A stretch of DNA of 64,000 nucleotides from the IMG/VR virus record IMGVR_UViG_3300044632_001003, positions 124,001 to 188,000 of that record. One strand, given 5' to 3'. This document shows, piece after piece, positions 8,762-63,893 of this stretch. The notes beneath the pieces are model-generated. The model saw only the letters and a program-made list of their open reading frames with translations. It searched no databases and was not told the origin of the DNA. The first letter of the stretch is position 1. Every line of letters starts with the position of its first letter. A program made the position numbers and the translations under genes.

Positions 8762-9400
8762 TTATTTATTCCACTCTAACGCTTCTGAGACTGATGGAAA
8801 TTGTTCGGTAAATATTTTCTTACACTCAAGAGCAATATCCATGTGTTCTTTCTGAGTTCCATTTGCAGAACGAAGATTGATATAATGAATCCATGACCTG
8901 CATGATCCCGACATATAAATGCGTGTAGGCGTCGCTAAGGGCAGTACAAACCTTGCACACTCCTTTGCTACTCCATGAGCAAGAAGTTCCTTATAGAGTT
9001 GCATAGAGTGTGCAAAATGGTCTTGAATCTTACTCTGTAGAGTCAGTTTCTCATACTCAGAAATGTCGTCAATAGAGTTCTGACGATTCTTGGTATCTTG
9101 ACGACGAAGTTCAGGTACAGGAATATAATCGCTCAACAAAGAAGAATCTGCATAACGCTGCGAAAATTCTTGATATGTGAAAGAACGGTGCCTCAAAATT
9201 TGAGCTGCGATACCACGATTTGTTTCGATCTCAAGAGTCATAAAAGACTGCTCAAAAACAGACCAATGATTATGCTTAATGCAATAAGCAAGCAACTTGG
9301 CATAGTTTTCGTTGTCTTGATTCGCAGGGTTGCTAACTCTAGCAACATATGCCATTGTTTTTTCTGCATCTGGGGTCACGCTAATGAGTTTTACTGTCAT
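8762..9400 (-). CDS. thyX: Flavin-dependent thymidylate synthase
   Basis: HWSVFE, QILRHRSFTYQEFSQRYA, ARFVLP. Confidence 0.97.
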   Translation of the reverse strand: MTVKLISVTPDAEKTMAYVARVSNPANQDNENYAKLLAYCIKHNHWSVFEQSFMTLEIETNRGIAAQILRHRSFTYQEFSQRYADSSLLSDYIPVPELRRQDTKNRQNSIDDISEYEKLTLQSKIQDHFAHSMQLYKELLAHGVAKECARFVLPLATPTRIYMSGSCRSWIHYINLRSANGTQKEHMDIALECKKIFTEQFPSVSEALEWNK

Positions 9401-9564
9401 TTCTTTCCAAATCCTTTTGATGTTTTTGCTTCGAGTTCTGAAAGTTCTTCTTCCAGAATCCTTAATTGTGATTTCATTTCAATCAATTGCTCAGCAGAAT
9501 ATAAATGCTCTTGTTTAATCAATCTACGGAGCAATTTCATCATTTTTCTTGCCCTATTAGTCAT
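9397..9564 (-). CDS. Small conserved cyanophage protein (55 aa)
   Basis: Hand translation MTNRARKMMKLLRRLIKQEHLYS...SKGFGKK*; ATGA overlap with thyX. Confidence 0.75.
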   Translation of the reverse strand: MTNRARKMMKLLRRLIKQEHLYSAEQLIEMKSQLRILEEELSELEAKTSKGFGKK

Positions 9565-9730
9565 CTAAATCAGAATCCTCAAAAATTTCGTCGTAATCTA
9601 ACATTGGTCTTTTTCTGACTTCTGGATTTGTATAAGAATATGCAGATACATCAGAATAAACTTCTGCTTTCAGAGAATCAACCAAGAGTTCTAGATTACG
9701 GACAATAAGTTTTAGTTTGTCTTTATCCAT
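9557..9730 (-). CDS. Small conserved cyanophage protein (57 aa)
   Basis: Hand translation MDKDKLKLIVRNLELLVDSLKAEVYSD...DYDEIFEDSDLDD*. Confidence 0.8.
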   Translation of the reverse strand: MDKDKLKLIVRNLELLVDSLKAEVYSDVSAYSYTNPEVRKRPMLDYDEIFEDSDLDD

Positions 9731-9751
9731 AAGATACTATTCTCTTTCAAT

Positions 9752-9790
9752 ATTTTAACATAAAAAAAGGAGGGAATCAACCCTCCTTTA
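9752..9790 (-). terminator. Intrinsic terminator overlapping a sigma70-type promoter
   Basis: GGAGGG-TTGATT-CCCTCC-T7; TTGATT-17 nt-TAAAAT. Confidence 0.8.
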
Positions 9791-9792
9791 CT

Positions 9793-9894
9793 TCAAGCAA
9801 CTTGTGGTTGCTTCGCCATATTCAGTTGTGCGTTATGAAGGAGTTTTTCCTTTTTTGCTTTGAGTTTGAGATAGCGAACGAAGTAAGTGTTCAT
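9793..9894 (-). CDS. 33-aa basic peptide
   Basis: MNTYFVRYLKLKAKKEKLLHNAQLNMAKQPQVA*; GGAGG RBS; ATGA coupling to the DUF4278 gene. Confidence 0.7.
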   Translation of the reverse strand: MNTYFVRYLKLKAKKEKLLHNAQLNMAKQPQVA

Positions 9895-10055
9895 TTTGCA
9901 CCTCCCTTAGTTTTAGACATAGAGAGTTTGTTTCCATTTTCATCAACGTAAAACATAGTACCACGATAAATTTCTACGTGGGGTTCAATTTTAAACGTTT
10001 GATTTGGACGTTCTGCGGTATCATATTCGACACCACGATATACGACTTTAGACAT
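9891..10055 (-). CDS. DUF4278 family protein (54 aa)
   Basis: MSKVVYRGVEYDT...EIYRGTMF: two YRG motifs; AAGGAG RBS; directly downstream of glutamine riboswitch-like RNA. Confidence 0.8.
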   Translation of the reverse strand: MSKVVYRGVEYDTAERPNQTFKIEPHVEIYRGTMFYVDENGNKLSMSKTKGGAK

Positions 10056-10087
10056 TAGGTTTTCTCCTTAATTTTGAGGCTAAAGAG

Positions 10088-10256
10088 CGTTCCTTCAGTC
10101 GGCTTTTGCGTCTATGAATTTACAAGTTCTTGGAGATCCTTCTTTAAAGATCTGAATAAGTTCAGATCTTGCAGGCTCATCCATTTTTAGTTTTACATTA
10201 CTAATAAGTCTTTGAGCCTCAATGCAAGTCCAGAGAATTGTTTCCATAGATGAACG
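10088..10256 (-). ncRNA. Glutamine riboswitch-like aptamer 2 (Downstream-peptide/glnA family) with an ORF in its P2 loop
   Basis: CGTTCA-TCTATG...CATAGA-CGCAAAAGCCGACTGAAGGAACG; P1 CGTTC/GAACG, P2 TCTATG/CATAGA. Confidence 0.8.
10095..10247 (-). CDS. 50-aa two-cysteine protein nested in aptamer 2
   Basis: METILWTCIEAQRLISNVKLKMDEPARSELIQIFKEGSPRTCKFIDAKAD*. Confidence 0.7.
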   Translation of the reverse strand: METILWTCIEAQRLISNVKLKMDEPARSELIQIFKEGSPRTCKFIDAKAD

Positions 10257-10259
10257 ATC

Positions 10260-10510
10260 CGTTCCGAGTCGGCTTACTTCCGTCCTATTCAGTTTAGCAC
10301 TTAAGTCTTATAACGTCCTTTCGGAGTTCTGATAGCAATCGGTCTTCTTTTCTTTGGTCTACTACATCGTCGTTTTTAACGATGTCCATTAGTTCCCACG
10401 CTGCGTCGCAACTTATAGTCACTTGATTAGATTTGGCAAGTTGAGGCGTAGAAATAGAAAGAAGTGGAACCCATGCTAAAAGCAAAAGTGCTTTAGTCAT
10501 AGGATGAACG
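10260..10510 (-). ncRNA. Glutamine riboswitch-like aptamer 1 with an ORF in its P2 loop
   Basis: CGTTCA-TCCTAT...ATAGGA-CGGAAGTAAGCCGACTCGGAACG; P1 CGTTC/GAACG, P2 TCCTAT/ATAGGA. Confidence 0.72.
10294..10500 (-). CDS. 68-aa two-cysteine protein with a signal-peptide-like N-terminus, nested in aptamer 1
   Basis: MTKALLLLAWVPLLSISTP...SCDAAWEL...LKC*. Confidence 0.7.
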   Translation of the reverse strand: MTKALLLLAWVPLLSISTPQLAKSNQVTISCDAAWELMDIVKNDDVVDQRKEDRLLSELRKDVIRLKC

Positions 10511-10520
10511 TTAGGGGATT

Positions 10521-10550
10521 ATTATACCCCTATTCACACTATATAGTCAA
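10521..10550 (-). promoter_or_regulatory. sigma70-type promoter for the riboswitch unit
   Basis: TTGACT-18 nt-TATAAT; predicted start ~10514, just before aptamer 1. Confidence 0.75.
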
Positions 10551-10566
10551 GTTTTATTTTGAAATA

Positions 10567-10580
10567 GTAACAATAGATAC
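10567..10580. promoter_or_regulatory. NtcA-like binding site
   Basis: GTA-ACAATAGA-TAC (GTA-N8-TAC) followed by A. Confidence 0.6.
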
Positions 10581-10676
10581 AAAAATGTATCTCTATTATA
10601 CTAAAAGGCGTGAAGATTTATGAAAACCTTCGCGCAAGAAAAATTTTGGCGGAAATTTTTTACCCCAAAAAGAAAA

Positions 10677-11030
10677 TCACTTTCGCTTTTTGGTTTTGGG
10701 TGCTTGATAACCCCATAACTTTGGATTGATTCTTCCATACCCAAAGTCAATACTCTTTAGATTTTCACGAAACTTGTCCCAGTACATATCAAACAAACGA
10801 ATTCGTGATCCTCTAGTTAAATCAAAACAAATTTCCTCATCAACAATATACTTTACGATGTAAGCATCATTCGGTGCTTCTTTAGTACAGACATCAGCAT
10901 ATGAACCATTTTCAATTAAAATATCACAACCATAGCGTGACTTACAGGTTTCTTTTTCTGCTGGTGTCCAATAGTCCATATGCTTTTCCGTATTGTGGGT
11001 TTCTTCAACTACATCACGAACCTGACTCAC
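10677..11030 (-). CDS. Conserved cyanophage hypothetical protein
   Basis: APNDAYIVKY...FDMYWDKF...GYGRINPKLWG; probable GTG start coupled to the upstream stop. Confidence 0.75.
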   Translation of the reverse strand: MSQVRDVVEETHNTEKHMDYWTPAEKETCKSRYGCDILIENGSYADVCTKEAPNDAYIVKYIVDEEICFDLTRGSRIRLFDMYWDKFRENLKSIDFGYGRINPKLWGYQAPKTKKRK

Positions 11031-11650
11031 GAACGACCTCCCCACTTAATATCAGGATAAGCTTGTGAAACTACTTCCCTGGTGAGTTTGTATTTGTCTG
11101 TCAGTTTTTTATCCTTAGTAAGAATAACAATTTCTGCTTCAAGAGGATGAAGACCTTGAAGAATGTTAATAAACATTGTTTCTCTACGAAGAGAACTCAA
11201 TCCATCGTTACCACCCTTTACAAAATTATAAAACTTATTATATTCCTTACGAATTGATGAGCGTCCCTGGTCCTGAGAACCTAAAGAACTACTTCCCAAC
11301 TCACCCATCTTAGAAACAGCATCTGTAATCTTTCCAGACAGAGTTCCGCTGAATGAAGTTTGTTCATCAGTACCTGCATAAGGTACATCTCCTGGGGGAA
11401 GAATAGAAACAACCGTCTCATCAAAGTTCCAAATAAAAAGAGTCTTCAGAGCAGGATGAGAATACTTTTGAAGTACTTCTACCTTTTTTGCTGTACTTTT
11501 TTGCTTACATGCAAGACTTAAAATCTCAAAAATAAATGGATTTGAAGGAAGATCGGGAATAGGAGATTCCTTCTTAACCGTAAATTTTGATTCAGTCTTC
11601 TTCGTCGCCGTTGTCTTCGTAGTCATGATAGTTCTCAAAGTTAAATGCAA
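11027..11650 (-). CDS. Conserved T4-like cyanophage protein (DUF6433-like)
   Basis: LFIWNFDETVVSILPPGDVPY...RRETMFINILQGLHPLEAE. Confidence 0.75.
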   Translation of the reverse strand: MHLTLRTIMTTKTTATKKTESKFTVKKESPIPDLPSNPFIFEILSLACKQKSTAKKVEVLQKYSHPALKTLFIWNFDETVVSILPPGDVPYAGTDEQTSFSGTLSGKITDAVSKMGELGSSSLGSQDQGRSSIRKEYNKFYNFVKGGNDGLSSLRRETMFINILQGLHPLEAEIVILTKDKKLTDKYKLTREVVSQAYPDIKWGGRS

Positions 11651-39789: not shown

Positions 39790-39890
39790 GACCATCAGGG
39801 AAATGGTGGAGATACTATGCTCCCCGCACCCTTAGCGGGGATATGAGAGACGTAATTTATACACCCATAGGTCTCGGTTAGCGGGTGTTG
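39790..39890 (-). ncRNA. PhotoRC-II-like structured psbA leader RNA
   Basis: GAGAC/GTCTC stem crossing TATGGG/CTCATA stem; CCCCGC/GCGGGG hairpin; 5' of phage psbA. Confidence 0.65.
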
Positions 39891-39930
39891 CAAACATTAA
39901 GGATTTGTTACATTCTTTAACGTGTTGATG

Positions 39931-62058: not shown

Positions 62059-62855
62059 AGAAATTCAAAGTTACCAAATGGATAATCAACTGTTGATTTA
62101 TTATAGCATTCTCCACCAAACCAATTTTTGGGGGCAATTACTTTTTTACTTTTTGCTAACCATGCACCCCACCAAGAGAATGATGAATTTGCAATGATGT
62201 GATAATCGCATAATGACATTAAGCAAAGATCAGCATCGGTTGTGTTTTCTTCTGATATCAAAAACCTATCATCTTTAAATAAATCCTGCTCTTTACACCA
62301 AGATTCATCATCAGAAAAAACAATAACAGGAAGTTCTGGTAGTTTAGAAAGTGCTTCCTGATAATAACTAATTGGTTGCACAGGATGATTTGGATTAGAG
62401 GTATAATCTCCTCTACGAATATGTAAAGAGATTACTTCACTATCAAAATTTTCTTTAAGAAATTCTTTACAATTAGAATACAACTCTTCATTAAATCTAA
62501 AGTCTTCTCGTATCTCATCTTCAATATGCTTGAAGTATTTTTCGGTTTGAAAGTATCCCATTAAATCTACATTATCTGGGCAATTGATGAATAATTCCTC
62601 ATCAAATTCATGCTTTCTTTCCCAAAAAGTATTGGCATCCTGTAGAGCACAATCATTATTTTTTTCTATATTTTCAAAAACATCGTATAAAATAACATCA
62701 GAATTTTTGACATTATCATCATGCTGCCCAAAAACATATCTAGGTGGAATGATAAATCCATATCCCCTATTTCTAGCAATTCCTTTTAAAGAAGCATATT
62801 GAAACATTTGATTGGCAAGTCTTCCAAGATTGCCAATATGATTGAGTGATATCAT
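62055..62855 (-). CDS. Alpha-1,2-fucosyltransferase (GT11)
   Basis: GRLANQMFQYA, GYFQ, HIRRGDY, VFSDD, NSSFSWWGA. Confidence 0.93.
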   Translation of the reverse strand: MISLNHIGNLGRLANQMFQYASLKGIARNRGYGFIIPPRYVFGQHDDNVKNSDVILYDVFENIEKNNDCALQDANTFWERKHEFDEELFINCPDNVDLMGYFQTEKYFKHIEDEIREDFRFNEELYSNCKEFLKENFDSEVISLHIRRGDYTSNPNHPVQPISYYQEALSKLPELPVIVFSDDESWCKEQDLFKDDRFLISEENTTDADLCLMSLCDYHIIANSSFSWWGAWLAKSKKVIAPKNWFGGECYNKSTVDYPFGNFEFL

Positions 62856-63498: not shown

Positions 63499-63508
63499 TG
63501 ATTCTTTT

Positions 63509-63893
63509 CAGGCTCGCCACCAATTCTTTGACTGGAAATTGGAAACCAGGCGGGAGAGAGTCCCATCCGCACCACTTGCTTTTTTATGGGAAAGCAAGAA
63601 ACCAGAAGGGGTCAAATTTGACTCCACCACTTGGTTTTAAGAAACCAAGAAAAGTTGGGTTAACTTTGATATTTCGGTGATACCAAAGAATGCTATCAGA
63701 AATAGCACATCCCAGAGTTTGAGTTTGATAGCAAAAGGAATACCGAGTAGTCCCCCAATAAACTTTATTATCAAACCATTTTTGAAATCTCCCCACAACA
63801 TGATTTGATAACCAAGTAGGAGAAGAAAGTTCCCGATATACCTCAGGATACTTGTTTTAGACATAAGGGGTTTGCTCCCGACCAGTGCTGTTA
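63509..63893 (-). ncRNA. manA/wcaG-like cyanophage structured RNA
   Basis: Three TTTC-hairpin-GTGGYG units; 5' CACTGGTCGGGAGCAAACCCC; ACTGG complementary to loop CCAGT. Exact Rfam family uncertain. Confidence 0.6.
63637..63864 (-). CDS. 75-aa membrane protein inside the structured RNA
   Basis: Hydrophobic segments throughout; stop lies in the TTGGTTT/AACCAA hairpin loop. Confidence 0.65.
   Translation of the reverse strand: MSKTSILRYIGNFLLLLGYQIMLWGDFKNGLIIKFIGGLLGIPFAIKLKLWDVLFLIAFFGITEISKLTQLFLVS

What the first reader, a model, noticed from the sequence alone, without database searches (positions are those of the whole stretch)
10521..10601. NtcA-like box upstream: two layers of nitrogen sensing on one phage transcript
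Seen: GTAACAATAGATACA (GTA-N8-TAC, 10567-10580) is centred about 60 nt upstream of the predicted start of the TTGACT/TATAAT promoter. An adjacent AGATACA-TTTT-TGTATCT palindrome, an imperfect GTA-N9-TAC (10587-10601) and a second TATAAT (10595-10600) are also present. Established: NtcA is the 2-oxoglutarate-responsive nitrogen regulator, and host gifB is controlled by both NtcA and a glutamine riboswitch. Inference: the phage unit plugs into the host NtcA regulon.
Basis: partly seen in the sequence, partly recalled or inferred. Interest (0 to 1): 0.62.

Follow-up and report, generated by a model that had tools for sequence, protein, structure and literature searches.

The report
Conserved NtcA box on phage riboswitch unit
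A host nitrogen-regulator (NtcA) binding motif sits just upstream of the promoter of a cyanophage glutamine-riboswitch / glutamine-synthetase-inhibitor-like gene unit and is kept in about 95% of more than 100 related phage loci, so the phage very probably reads the host's nitrogen status twice, as the host does for its own gifB gene.

Summary
GTA-N8-TAC lies at 10567-10580. On the minus strand, where all local genes lie, it is centred about 59.5 nt upstream of the start predicted for the TTGACT-18-TATAAT promoter (10550..10521).

On its own the motif is not significant: there are 42 copies in the 205-kb phage genome. Conservation is what decides it.
- Of 111 phage loci that carry the same glutamine-riboswitch core and have enough upstream DNA, 105 have a perfect box at the 5' edge of the unit, and 3 more are one mismatch off.
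- These represent 45 different 14-mers and 54 flank clusters.
- The boxes also keep C5/G10 and the flanking T/A, bases outside the search pattern that NtcA is known to contact or prefer.
- Homologous tandem riboswitches in SAR86/SAR92, which have no NtcA, have none (0 of 21).
- Cyanobacterial gifB-type loci have the box over the core promoter (9 of 20).

The unit runs: box, sigma-70-type promoter, two glutamine aptamers with ORFs inserted in their P2 loops, a DUF4278/IF17-like gene, terminator.

NtcA binding was not tested and the sign of regulation is unknown. The box is not at the activator position (-41.5). I favour repression, which would fit the glutamine-ON riboswitch. This is a phage copy of a known host logic: a new member of a known kind, of moderate interest.

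The parts
10567..10580 (.). NtcA-type box GTA-N8-TAC. It reads GTATCTATTGTTAC in the direction of transcription, with C at position 5, G at position 10 and T before the GTA.
   Evidence: Conserved in 105 of 111 informative related loci. Logo.
10587..10601 (.). Imperfect second box, GTA-N9-TAC. Its proximal half (GATACA) is a perfect NtcA half-site. Present only in the window's clade and in S-SRM01.
   Evidence: long-class listing. Centre about 20.5 bp from the main box.
10575..10592 (.). Palindrome AGATACA-N4-TGTATCT, formed by the facing half-sites of the two boxes. The two boxes together can fold as an AU-rich hairpin.
   Evidence: -11 kcal/mol, z -4.3, with no U-tract after it.
10545..10550 (-). 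-35 hexamer TTGACT.
   Evidence: TTG is kept at 8-9 nt from the box in most relatives and 16 nt in the window's clade.
10521..10526 (-). -10 hexamer TATAAT.
   Evidence: TATAAT is the commonest hexamer at this place in relatives.
10512..10532 (-). Covarying 6-bp inverted repeat that encloses the -10 hexamer as its loop.
   Evidence: covariation score 0.636 against 0.287 shuffled (0 of 500 shuffles as high); slid controls 0.20 or less.
10514..10514 (-). Probable RNA 5' end (transcription start), 7 nt after the -10 hexamer.
   Evidence: One metatranscriptome contig (run X2) ends here and runs into Illumina adapter. Contig depth is high over 10010-10497 and zero over 10559-10619 (near zero to 10863) in all four runs.
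10595..10624 (-). Second promoter-like match, TTCATA-18-TATAAT, whose -10 lies inside the GTA-N9-TAC element.
   Evidence: 10 of 12. No RNA contigs cover it. Specific to the window's clade.
10501..10510 (-). 5' strand of glutamine aptamer 1 (CGTTCATCCT). Its P2 stem, CCTAT...ATAGG, encloses ORF68.
   Evidence: A joint at 10296>10499 in a relative lacking ORF68.
10294..10500 (-). ORF68, a signal-peptide-like small protein inserted in the P2 loop of aptamer 1.
   Evidence: Present in 26 'long' loci and absent in 79 'short' loci.
10248..10289 (-). Conserved core of aptamer 1 (ACGGAAGTA ... GGAACG) followed by the 5' strand of aptamer 2 (CGTTCATCT). This stretch is the Downstream-peptide / glutamine-II-like element.
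   Evidence: 93-96% identity to many cyanophages; annotated as a riboswitch in S-CREM1..
10095..10247 (-). ORF50 ('downstream peptide'), lying in the P2 loop of aptamer 2. Its last codons are the aptamer core.
   Evidence: Joints at 10116>10242 in relatives that carry a short hairpin instead.
10087..10112 (-). 3' core of aptamer 2 (GACGCAAAAGCCGAC..GAAGGAACGC).
   Evidence: RF01739 matches the equivalent aptamer in relatives L102 and L025.
9891..10055 (-). ORF54, a DUF4278 / IF17-like small protein with two YRG motifs, preceded by an AAGGAG Shine-Dalgarno (10069..10064).
   Evidence: E 1.2e-3, 19.6 bits, below the 25.3-bit cut-off. 20 of 22 homologues match DUF4278.
9766..9789 (-). Intrinsic terminator that closes the unit.
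   Evidence: 9-bp stem, 5 GC pairs, T-run.

Best explanation
The box is an operator for the host's 2-oxoglutarate-sensing regulator NtcA, and it belongs to a mobile phage transcription unit. The unit runs: box, sigma-70-type early promoter (start about 10514), two glutamine aptamers, an IF17-like (DUF4278) gene, terminator (9766-10580, minus strand).

When the infected cell is nitrogen-starved, 2-oxoglutarate is high and NtcA (with PipX) occupies the box. I think it most likely lowers transcription from the near-consensus promoter. Separately, the riboswitch permits translation only when glutamine is high. Both layers would then confine the IF17-like protein to nitrogen-replete hosts, as at host gifB.

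Shown here:
- The motif and its position.
- Its conservation, and NtcA-type base preferences beyond GTA/TAC.
- Its restriction to cyanobacterial and cyanophage versions of the riboswitch.
- The layout of the unit.

Inferred:
- That NtcA binds: about 0.75.
- That binding represses: about 0.55-0.6, given binding.
- That the IF17-like protein acts on glutamine synthetase.
For: - Perfect GTA-N8-TAC in 105 of 117 riboswitch places. Six of the other 12 are truncated contigs and three are one mismatch off.
- 90 unique promoter strings, 45 distinct 14-mers and 54 clusters at 80% flank identity.
- Background is only 0.36 per kb even with these boxes counted; N7 and N9 variants are at 0.17-0.18 per kb.
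- Bases outside the search pattern fit NtcA: C5 in 77 of 91, G10 in 45 of 91, T before the box in 57 of 91, A after it in 78 of 91. The NtcA-DNA crystal structure shows R191 contacting the G:C pair 3 bp from the dyad and used TGTATC...GATACA as the perfect box (PMC11850224).
- The inner positions are mostly not self-complementary (24-43 of 91), so this is not an RNA hairpin.
- The box travels with the unit behind different upstream genes: SpeD in S-PM2, purM in P-HM1, a tRNA in L086.
- 0 of 21 SAR86/SAR92 tandem riboswitch loci have the box. 9 of 20 cyanobacterial glnA-aptamer loci have it between -35 and the start. One of these has the identical 14-mer.
- No Crp-type HTH is encoded in the 96%-complete phage genome.
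- For repression: host gif genes are NtcA-repressed (PMC6316151). The MED4 IF17-like gene has a box over its start, and both glutamine riboswitch classes are ON switches (PMC6212724, PMC6698751). The promoter is near-consensus and needs no activator. About 20 relatives have the box centred near -30, the geometry of repressed gifA. In Synechocystis, repressed sites range from -69 to +83 (PMC5714215).
Against: - No binding or expression data exist.
- In the window (-59.5) and in most relatives (about -49.5 to -53.5) the box lies upstream of the -35 and does not overlap the core promoter. That is not the classical repressor geometry.
- The nearly fixed 8-nt gap to the -35 could instead reflect a contact with RNA polymerase, that is, activation.
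- P-SSM2 and three metagenomic loci lack the box yet keep the promoter.
- Start sites are predicted, apart from one RNA-contig end.
- The loci are related, so the counts are not independent events.
- The DUF4278 match is below Pfam's cut-off.
Confidence: 0.45

Rival explanations
1. NtcA binds the box but activates. From -59.5/-61.5 (window) or about -50 (most relatives) it would act like a class I CRP-family activator through the alpha subunit or PipX. Transcription would then rise under nitrogen stress while translation still needs glutamine, a two-signal coincidence gate.
For: - All the evidence for binding listed above.
- The box does not overlap the core promoter.
- The spacing to the -35 is nearly fixed: 8 nt in 40 and 9 nt in 9 of 90 unique promoters.
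- The three spacing classes differ by roughly whole helical turns.
- Activating NtcA sites upstream of -41.5 are reported (PMC5714215, PMC6316151).
- Sullivan et al. proposed that phage NtcA promoters exploit the host nitrogen-stress response (PMC3037559).
Against: - The promoter matches 11 of 12 consensus positions with a good -35, unlike NtcA-dependent promoters.
- 71% of activated Synechocystis sites sit at -41 to -44.
- Activation under nitrogen stress would oppose the glutamine-ON riboswitch.
- It would also oppose the regulation of the host's homologous genes.
Confidence: 0.25
2. The palindrome is bound by some other dimeric protein, either a phage early protein or another host factor. 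The likeness to the NtcA box would be coincidental.
For: GTA/TAC invariance shows only that something reads both half-sites. Many small phage ORFs have no known function.
Against: - The phage genome encodes no Crp-type HTH.
- The extra preferences (C5/G10, flanking T/A) are those of NtcA.
- The same box stands at host gifB-type promoters, where NtcA control is known for Synechocystis.
- It is absent from the riboswitch in bacteria that lack NtcA.
Confidence: 0.1
3. The element is structural. In the window the two facing boxes form an AU-rich hairpin that ends or insulates transcription from the upstream gene (10677-11045). The box would be one arm of that hairpin.
For:: -11 kcal/mol, z -4.3, on the minus strand. 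S-SRM01 keeps a pairing partner with different inner bases.
Against: - The partner arm exists only in the window's clade. About 80 unique promoters have the single box with no partner.
- There is no U-tract, and the terminator scan does not call it.
- The inner box positions do not covary.
- Two similar palindromic boxes pair with each other automatically.
Confidence: 0.08
4. The box is an inert relic, carried along when the unit was captured from a cyanobacterial gifB-like locus.
For: The 14-mer is identical to one host gifB-type box (L175). The unit is clearly of host type.
Against: The N8, the flanks, the spacing and the neighbouring genes have all diverged while GTA and TAC stay intact in 105 of 111 loci across 54 flank clusters. 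That is purifying selection, not drift.
Confidence: 0.07

Closest known systems
Synechocystis sp. PCC 6803 gifB (IF17): NtcA-repressed promoter plus glutamine riboswitch in the 5' UTR (Klahn et al. 2018, PMC6212724; Bolay et al. 2018, PMC6316151)
   Same: The same three parts in the same order: NtcA box, glutamine aptamer, small DUF4278-type protein. Two nitrogen signals (2-oxoglutarate and glutamine) act on one transcript.
   Different: - In hosts the box overlaps the core promoter. The review gives centres of -30.5 and -7.5 for the two Synechocystis gif genes, and in the sampled host genomes the box ends 10-18 nt before the aptamer. Here it lies upstream of a consensus -35 at about -59.5.
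- The phage has two aptamers, with ORFs inserted in their P2 loops.
- The phage protein is shorter, and its DUF4278 match is below Pfam's cut-off.
Prochlorococcus MED4 Yfr6 / Downstream-peptide (glutamine-II) aptamer gene encoding an IF17-like protein, with a perfect NtcA site over the start (PMC6212724)
   Same: A picocyanobacterial-type aptamer core, a short IF17-like product and a perfect NtcA box. This is the probable source lineage of the phage unit.
   Different: The host box overlaps the transcription start, which implies repression. The phage box is 50-60 nt upstream in most loci.
Predicted NtcA promoters of marine cyanomyoviruses (Sullivan et al. 2010, PMC3037559)
   Same: The same motif search (intergenic GTA-N8-TAC) in T4-like cyanophages, with 1-16 sites per genome, and the same idea that phages exploit host NtcA.
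   Different: - That study counted sites genome by genome. It did not test conservation or link the sites to the riboswitch.
- Here one particular site is shown to be orthologous across more than 100 loci and tied to the glutamine-riboswitch unit.
- In this genome it is the only clean intergenic promoter-associated site I saw.
Canonical class II NtcA-activated promoter (glnA, nirA, NsiR4): box centred at -41.5, -10 of type TAN3T, no -35
   Same: The box sequence itself.
   Different: The spacing test fails. The centre is at -59.5 in the window, about -50 in most relatives and about -30 in a minority, and a strong -35 is present.
Anabaena gifA promoter with two NtcA sites at -28.5 and -77.5 (PMC6316151)
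   Same: A gif-type gene with one proximal and one distal NtcA site. In the window the two elements are centred at about -59.5 and -80.
   Different: The window's distal element has N9 spacing and only one good half-site, and no site overlaps the core promoter.

Membership tests
NtcA binding site (NtcA box) | Palindromic consensus GTA-N8-TAC | tested here: met
   10567-10580.
NtcA binding site (NtcA box) | Secondary determinants: a G:C pair 3 bp from the dyad (box positions 5 and 10) and the TGTA...TACA extension | tested here: met
   The window has C5, G10 and T before the GTA, but T rather than A after the TAC. Across the family: C5 77/91, G10 45/91, T0 57/91, A15 78/91, compared with PMC11850224.
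NtcA binding site (NtcA box) | Half-sites conserved in orthologous promoters while the spacer varies | tested here: met
   105 of 111 informative loci; 45 distinct 14-mers; 54 flank clusters.
NtcA binding site (NtcA box) | Occurs only where NtcA exists (cyanobacteria and their phages) | tested here: met
   0 of 21 SAR86/SAR92 tandem riboswitch loci; 9 of 20 cyanobacterial loci.
NtcA binding site (NtcA box) | 2-oxoglutarate-stimulated binding of NtcA (EMSA, footprint, ChIP) | not testable with these tools
   Needs an experiment.
Class II NtcA-activated promoter | Box centred near -41.5, about 22 nt from a TAN3T -10, with no -35 | tested here: not met
   The centre is at -59.5 from the predicted start at 10514, and a TTGACT -35 is present. 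A TATAGT 23 nt from the box exists only in the window's clade. In most relatives the equivalent element is 13 nt from the box.
NtcA-repressed promoter (gifA/gifB type) | Box overlapping the -35, the -10 or the start | tested here: not met
   No overlap in the window. The feature is met in about 20 unique relatives (box end 24-31 nt before the aptamer, centre about -30) and in host loci.
Sigma-70-type (group 1 sigma) promoter | -35 and -10 hexamers with 16-18 nt spacing, and a start 6-8 nt after the -10 | tested here: met
   TTGACT-18-TATAAT, 11 of 12. An RNA contig end at 10514 followed by adapter, and no RNA contigs over 10559-10619. This is thin evidence: one contig.
Glutamine riboswitch (RF01739 / glutamine-II) | Match to the curated covariance model | tested here: inconclusive
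   No match in the window at gathering score or at E up to 10. RF01739 matches the second aptamer in relatives with a short P2 (36.1 and 35.4 bits against a cut-off of 35). The window keeps the conserved cores but has 150-210-nt inserts in both P2 loops.
DUF4278 (IF7/IF17 glutamine synthetase inactivating factors) | Pfam PF14105 match above the gathering score | tested here: inconclusive
   ORF54: 19.6 bits against 25.3, E 1.2e-3. 20 of 22 phage homologues match at E 0.01 or better, best 1e-4. The two YRG motifs are invariant or nearly so.
Intrinsic terminator | GC-rich stem followed by a U-run | tested here: not met
   The 10563-10603 hairpin is AU-rich, has no U-run and is not called by the scan.

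The most novel reading that the evidence does not exclude
Cyanophages may have moved the NtcA box from the operator position it has at host gif genes (over the -10 or the start) to a fixed place upstream of a consensus early promoter. That would change its effect. The unit would then fire only when 2-oxoglutarate and glutamine are both high, a state that normal nitrogen control avoids but that phage takeover could create. The covarying hairpin that encloses the -10 hexamer would be a further, still unknown, control layer.
Probability: 0.2. Interest if true: 0.75.

Novelty: new member of a known kind. Interest (0 to 1): 0.5.

Why it matters
Many NtcA sites have been predicted in cyanophage genomes, but I found no case with evidence beyond a motif match. 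This site is orthologous across more than 100 phage contigs and several cultured phages (S-PM2, S-SSM7, P-HM1, S-SRM01). It is tied to a defined unit whose host counterpart controls glutamine synthetase. That gives a concrete, cheap test of whether a virus reads a host transcription factor and a host metabolite on one transcript, by gel shift, reporter assay, or infection of nitrogen-starved versus replete cells. It also bears on how phage infection depends on the nitrogen status of picocyanobacteria.

Tried and rejected
- Genome-wide enrichment of GTA-N8-TAC: none. There are 42 sites against 74 for the reversed control, so the case cannot rest on motif counts.
- Rfam on the window, three settings: no glutamine riboswitch match. 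This is explained by the ORF inserts in the P2 loops, and relatives with a short P2 do match.
- Canonical class II reading, box-N23-TATAGT at 10543..10538: rejected. In most relatives the equivalent TAnATA element is 13 nt from the box, and RNA contigs do not reach it.
- A phage-encoded Crp/NtcA-like regulator: none found.
- A second perfect box about 101 nt upstream in about 10 relatives: it lies inside the upstream gene's reading frame, so its conservation may reflect coding.
- A second stem-TATAAT-stem at 62396-62415: it appears to lie in coding sequence (read by eye, not checked) and lacks the promoter context, so it is probably chance.
- The pattern scan of genome contigs gave no marine Synechococcus or Prochlorococcus loci, because the pattern was too phage-specific. 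The host comparison therefore rests on a sample of other cyanobacteria.
- Literature: four full-text searches found no paper linking the phage riboswitch to an NtcA box. The library is incomplete.
- Read laying was given 1,801 letters.

Full report
CONTEXT. The window is bases 124001-188000 of a 205,009-bp IMG/VR virus record. It is a T4-like cyanomyovirus. It carries the cyanophage RNA motifs wcaG and PhotoRC-II. Its nearest cultured relative is the freshwater Synechococcus phage S-SRM01, at about 73-78% identity over parts of this region. All genes around the finding lie on the minus strand, so I read the region 5' to 3' on that strand.

OBSERVATION.
- GTA-N8-TAC at 10567-10580.
- The palindrome at 10575-10592.
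- GTA-N9-TAC at 10587-10601.
- A TATAAT at 10600..10595.
- TTGACT-18-TATAAT at 10550..10521, matching 11 of 12 consensus positions.

With a start 7 nt after the -10 (10514), the box centre is at -59.5.

CHANCE. The bare motif is not rare.
- 18 copies in the window against 9.9 +/- 2.8 in shuffles.
- Only 42 copies in the whole genome, fewer than the reversed control pattern at 74.
- 36 of the 42 lie inside ORFs of 60 aa or more.

THE UNIT. Downstream of the promoter the order is as follows.
- The 5' strand of a glutamine aptamer (10510..10501).
- ORF68 (10294-10500).
- The conserved aptamer core and a second 5' strand (10289..10248). This stretch is 93-96% identical in P-SSM2, P-SSM4, S-PM2, P-HM1 and others, and is annotated as a riboswitch in S-CREM1.
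- ORF50 (10095-10247).
- A second aptamer core (10112..10087).
- A Shine-Dalgarno and ORF54 (9891-10055).
- A small ORF (9793-9894).
- A terminator (9789..9766).

In 79 related loci the two ORFs are replaced by short hairpins. There the region reads as two tandem glnA-type aptamers, and Rfam RF01739 matches the second one. Metatranscriptome contigs show the deletion-type joints expected if ORF68 and ORF50 are inserts in the P2 loops: 10296>10499 and 10116>10242. This explains why Rfam finds nothing in the window itself.

ORF54 and its homologues have two invariant or near-invariant YRG motifs. They match DUF4278, the family of the glutamine synthetase inactivating factor IF17. The window's copy is below Pfam's threshold (19.6 against 25.3 bits). 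20 of 22 homologues match at E 0.01 or better.

CONSERVATION OF THE BOX. I fetched 119 viral contigs carrying the aptamer core and looked upstream. There were 117 riboswitch places, counting the window and S-SRM01.
- 105 have a perfect GTA-N8-TAC at the 5' edge of the unit: 79 directly before the aptamer and 26 before an ORF68-type insert.
- 6 contigs end before the expected place.
- 3 have a one-mismatch box at that place.
- 3 have none.

The 105 give 90 unique promoter strings, 45 distinct 14-mers and 54 clusters at 80% identity of the flanks. The background density in the same 916 kb is 0.36 per kb even with these boxes counted. The N7 and N9 variants are at 0.17-0.18 per kb.

The upstream neighbour differs between loci: SpeD in S-PM2, purM in P-HM1, a tRNA in L086, and others. 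So the box belongs to the unit, not to the preceding gene. Among cultured phages, S-PM2, S-SSM7 and P-HM1 have the box 7-8 nt upstream of the -35. P-SSM2 has none.

IS IT AN NtcA BOX? Beyond the six bases I searched for, the logo shows:
- C at position 5 in 77 of 91.
- G at position 10 in 45 of 91.
- T before the box in 57 of 91.
- A after the box in 78 of 91.

The NtcA-DNA crystal structure reports that R191 hydrogen-bonds a G:C pair 3 bp from the dyad, which corresponds to positions 5 and 10. A G stands there in only about half of natural sites. The idealised box in that work was TGTATC...GATACA (PMC11850224). The window's box has both C5 and G10.

The inner positions are not self-complementary in most loci (24-43 of 91), which argues against an RNA hairpin.

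CONTROLS.
- The same tandem riboswitch occurs in SAR86 and SAR92 genomes, which have no NtcA. None of 21 loci with upstream sequence has the box within 400 nt.
- In a sample of 301 cyanobacterial genomes, 9 of 20 distinct glnA-aptamer loci have a perfect box ending 10-18 nt before the aptamer, between a TTGACA -35 and the start. Two more are one mismatch off. One (L175) carries the very 14-mer of the window. This is the known gifB arrangement.
- The phage genome, 96% complete, encodes no Crp-type HTH.

PROMOTER AND START. The -35/-10 pair is conserved in most relatives. TTG lies 8-9 nt after the box in 49 of 90 unique promoters, and TATAAT is the commonest -10.

I laid four freshwater or aquatic metatranscriptome assemblies on 9400-11200.
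- Contigs pile up over 10010-10497.
- None lie over 10559-10619, and very few up to 10863.
- One contig (run X2) ends at 10514 and continues into Illumina adapter, as expected for a cDNA that reached an RNA 5' end.

This fits the predicted start but is thin. Contigs cannot prove a start, and divergence of relatives in the intergenic region could also produce the gap.

SPACING CLASSES. I measured from the box end to the C of the first CGTTCA, among unique promoters.
- 24-31 nt in 20. These have no -35; the box centre is about -30.
- 43-49 nt in 58. The box is 7-9 nt upstream of the -35; the centre is about -49.5 to -53.5.
- 55-57 nt in 10. This is the window's class: the box is 16 nt upstream of the -35, with the centre at -59.5 to -61.5.

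Only the window's class and the S-SRM01 group (which has the short spacing) carry the GTA-N9-TAC partner.

MECHANISM. That NtcA binds is an inference from sequence, which I put at about 0.75. The sign is less certain.

For repression:
- Host gif genes are NtcA-repressed (PMC6316151).
- The MED4 IF17-like gene has a box over its start (PMC6212724).
- Both riboswitch classes are glutamine-ON (PMC6212724, PMC6698751), so repression gives coherent logic.
- The promoter is near-consensus.
- The -30 class matches the gifA geometry.
- Repressed sites in Synechocystis range from -69 to +83 (PMC5714215).

For activation:
- The box does not overlap the core promoter in most loci.
- Its distance to the -35 is nearly fixed.
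- Upstream activating NtcA sites exist.

I commit to repression at about 0.55-0.6 given binding.

RIVALS.
- Another protein could read the palindrome. The NtcA-specific bases and the taxonomic controls argue against this.
- In the window the two boxes fold into a -11 kcal/mol hairpin. The partner arm is clade-specific, there is no U-run, and two similar palindromes pair automatically.
- An inert relic is unlikely, given intact half-sites across 54 diverged flank clusters.

KNOWN OR NEW.
- Intergenic NtcA motifs were counted in cyanomyovirus genomes in 2010 (PMC3037559).
- The glutamine riboswitch is known in cyanophages (PMC9964418, PMC2864571).
- The NtcA-plus-riboswitch logic is known for host gifB (PMC6212724).
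- Four full-text searches found no paper that links the phage riboswitch unit to a conserved NtcA box.

I therefore file it as a new member of a known kind. The upstream placement is its one clear departure.

UNEXPLAINED. The -10 hexamer is the loop of a 5-6-bp inverted repeat that covaries. There are 36 different 5' arms. The covariation score is 0.636 against 0.287 in shuffles (0 of 500 as high) and 0.20 or less when slid. If transcripts start at 10514 the hairpin is not in the primary RNA. It may act in read-through or late transcripts, or at the DNA level. A TAnATA element directly after the -35, at a fixed 13 nt from the box in 52 of 90 promoters, resembles the T4-type late promoter word quoted in PMC3037559. 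It could mark a second start upstream of the hairpin.

LIMITS.
- There are no binding or expression data under defined nitrogen regimes.
- The loci are related, so the counts overstate independence.
- The host comparison lacks marine picocyanobacteria.

Noticed in passing
window 10512-10532 (-): The -10 TATAAT of the unit's promoter is the loop of a covarying inverted repeat: TAGGGG...CCCCTA here, AGGTC...GACCT, GAGG...CCTC and others in relatives. The covariation score is 0.636 against 0.287 shuffled. Its function is unknown, and it would not be in an RNA that starts at 10514.
   Followed up: partly
window 10095-10510 (-): ORF68 and ORF50 sit inside the P2 loops of two tandem glutamine aptamers, and their start codons lie in the P2 stems. 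The last codons of ORF50 (…IDAKAD, stop) are the conserved core of aptamer 2, so peptide and aptamer are dual-coded. Translation of ORF50 should unfold aptamer 2 just upstream of the IF17-like gene.
   Followed up: partly
L121, L124, L125, L129-L131, L133-L135, L138, L139, L144, L145, L148, L150-L152, L154, L155, L161, L163: SAR86 and SAR92 (gammaproteobacterial) genomes carry tandem glutamine-riboswitch aptamers with the same conserved cores as the phage unit, and no NtcA box upstream.
   Followed up: partly
L175 (cyanobacterial genome G231:C552): A host gifB-type promoter has the identical 14-mer GTAACAATAGATAC, placed between a TTGACA -35 and the aptamer. In the phage the same 14-mer is inverted relative to transcription and lies upstream of the -35.
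   Followed up: no
window 10540-10545 (-), and relatives: A TAnATA word (TATATA, TAAATA, TAGATA) follows the -35 TTGnn directly, 13 nt from the box in 52 of 90 unique promoters. It resembles the T4-type late promoter word and could be a second start upstream of the -10 hairpin.
   Followed up: no
L003, L021, L027, L077, L079, L095, L098, L112, L114, L115, L118: A second perfect GTA-N8-TAC (GTAGATGTTTATAC type) lies 101-108 nt upstream of the main box, inside the reading frame of the upstream gene. It may be conserved because it is coding.
   Followed up: partly
window 10010-10500; runs X1-X4: Contigs matching the riboswitch unit are abundant in freshwater and aquatic metatranscriptome assemblies, with summed contig depth in the hundreds to thousands against 0-100 for flanking genes. 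Contigs from related phages inflate this figure.
   Followed up: partly
L123, L143, L164: Cyanophage contigs carrying this unit are binned into MAGs labelled Acetobacteraceae, Bacteroidota and Acidimicrobiaceae. This is probably binning contamination.
   Followed up: no
window 63506-63606 (-) and 39807-39900 (-): wcaG RNA (100.7 bits) and PhotoRC-II RNA (79.5 bits), both known cyanophage cis-regulatory motifs.
   Followed up: no
window 62396-62415 (+): This is the only other stem-TATAAT-stem in the window. It appears to lie in coding sequence and lacks the promoter context, so it is probably chance.
   Followed up: partly
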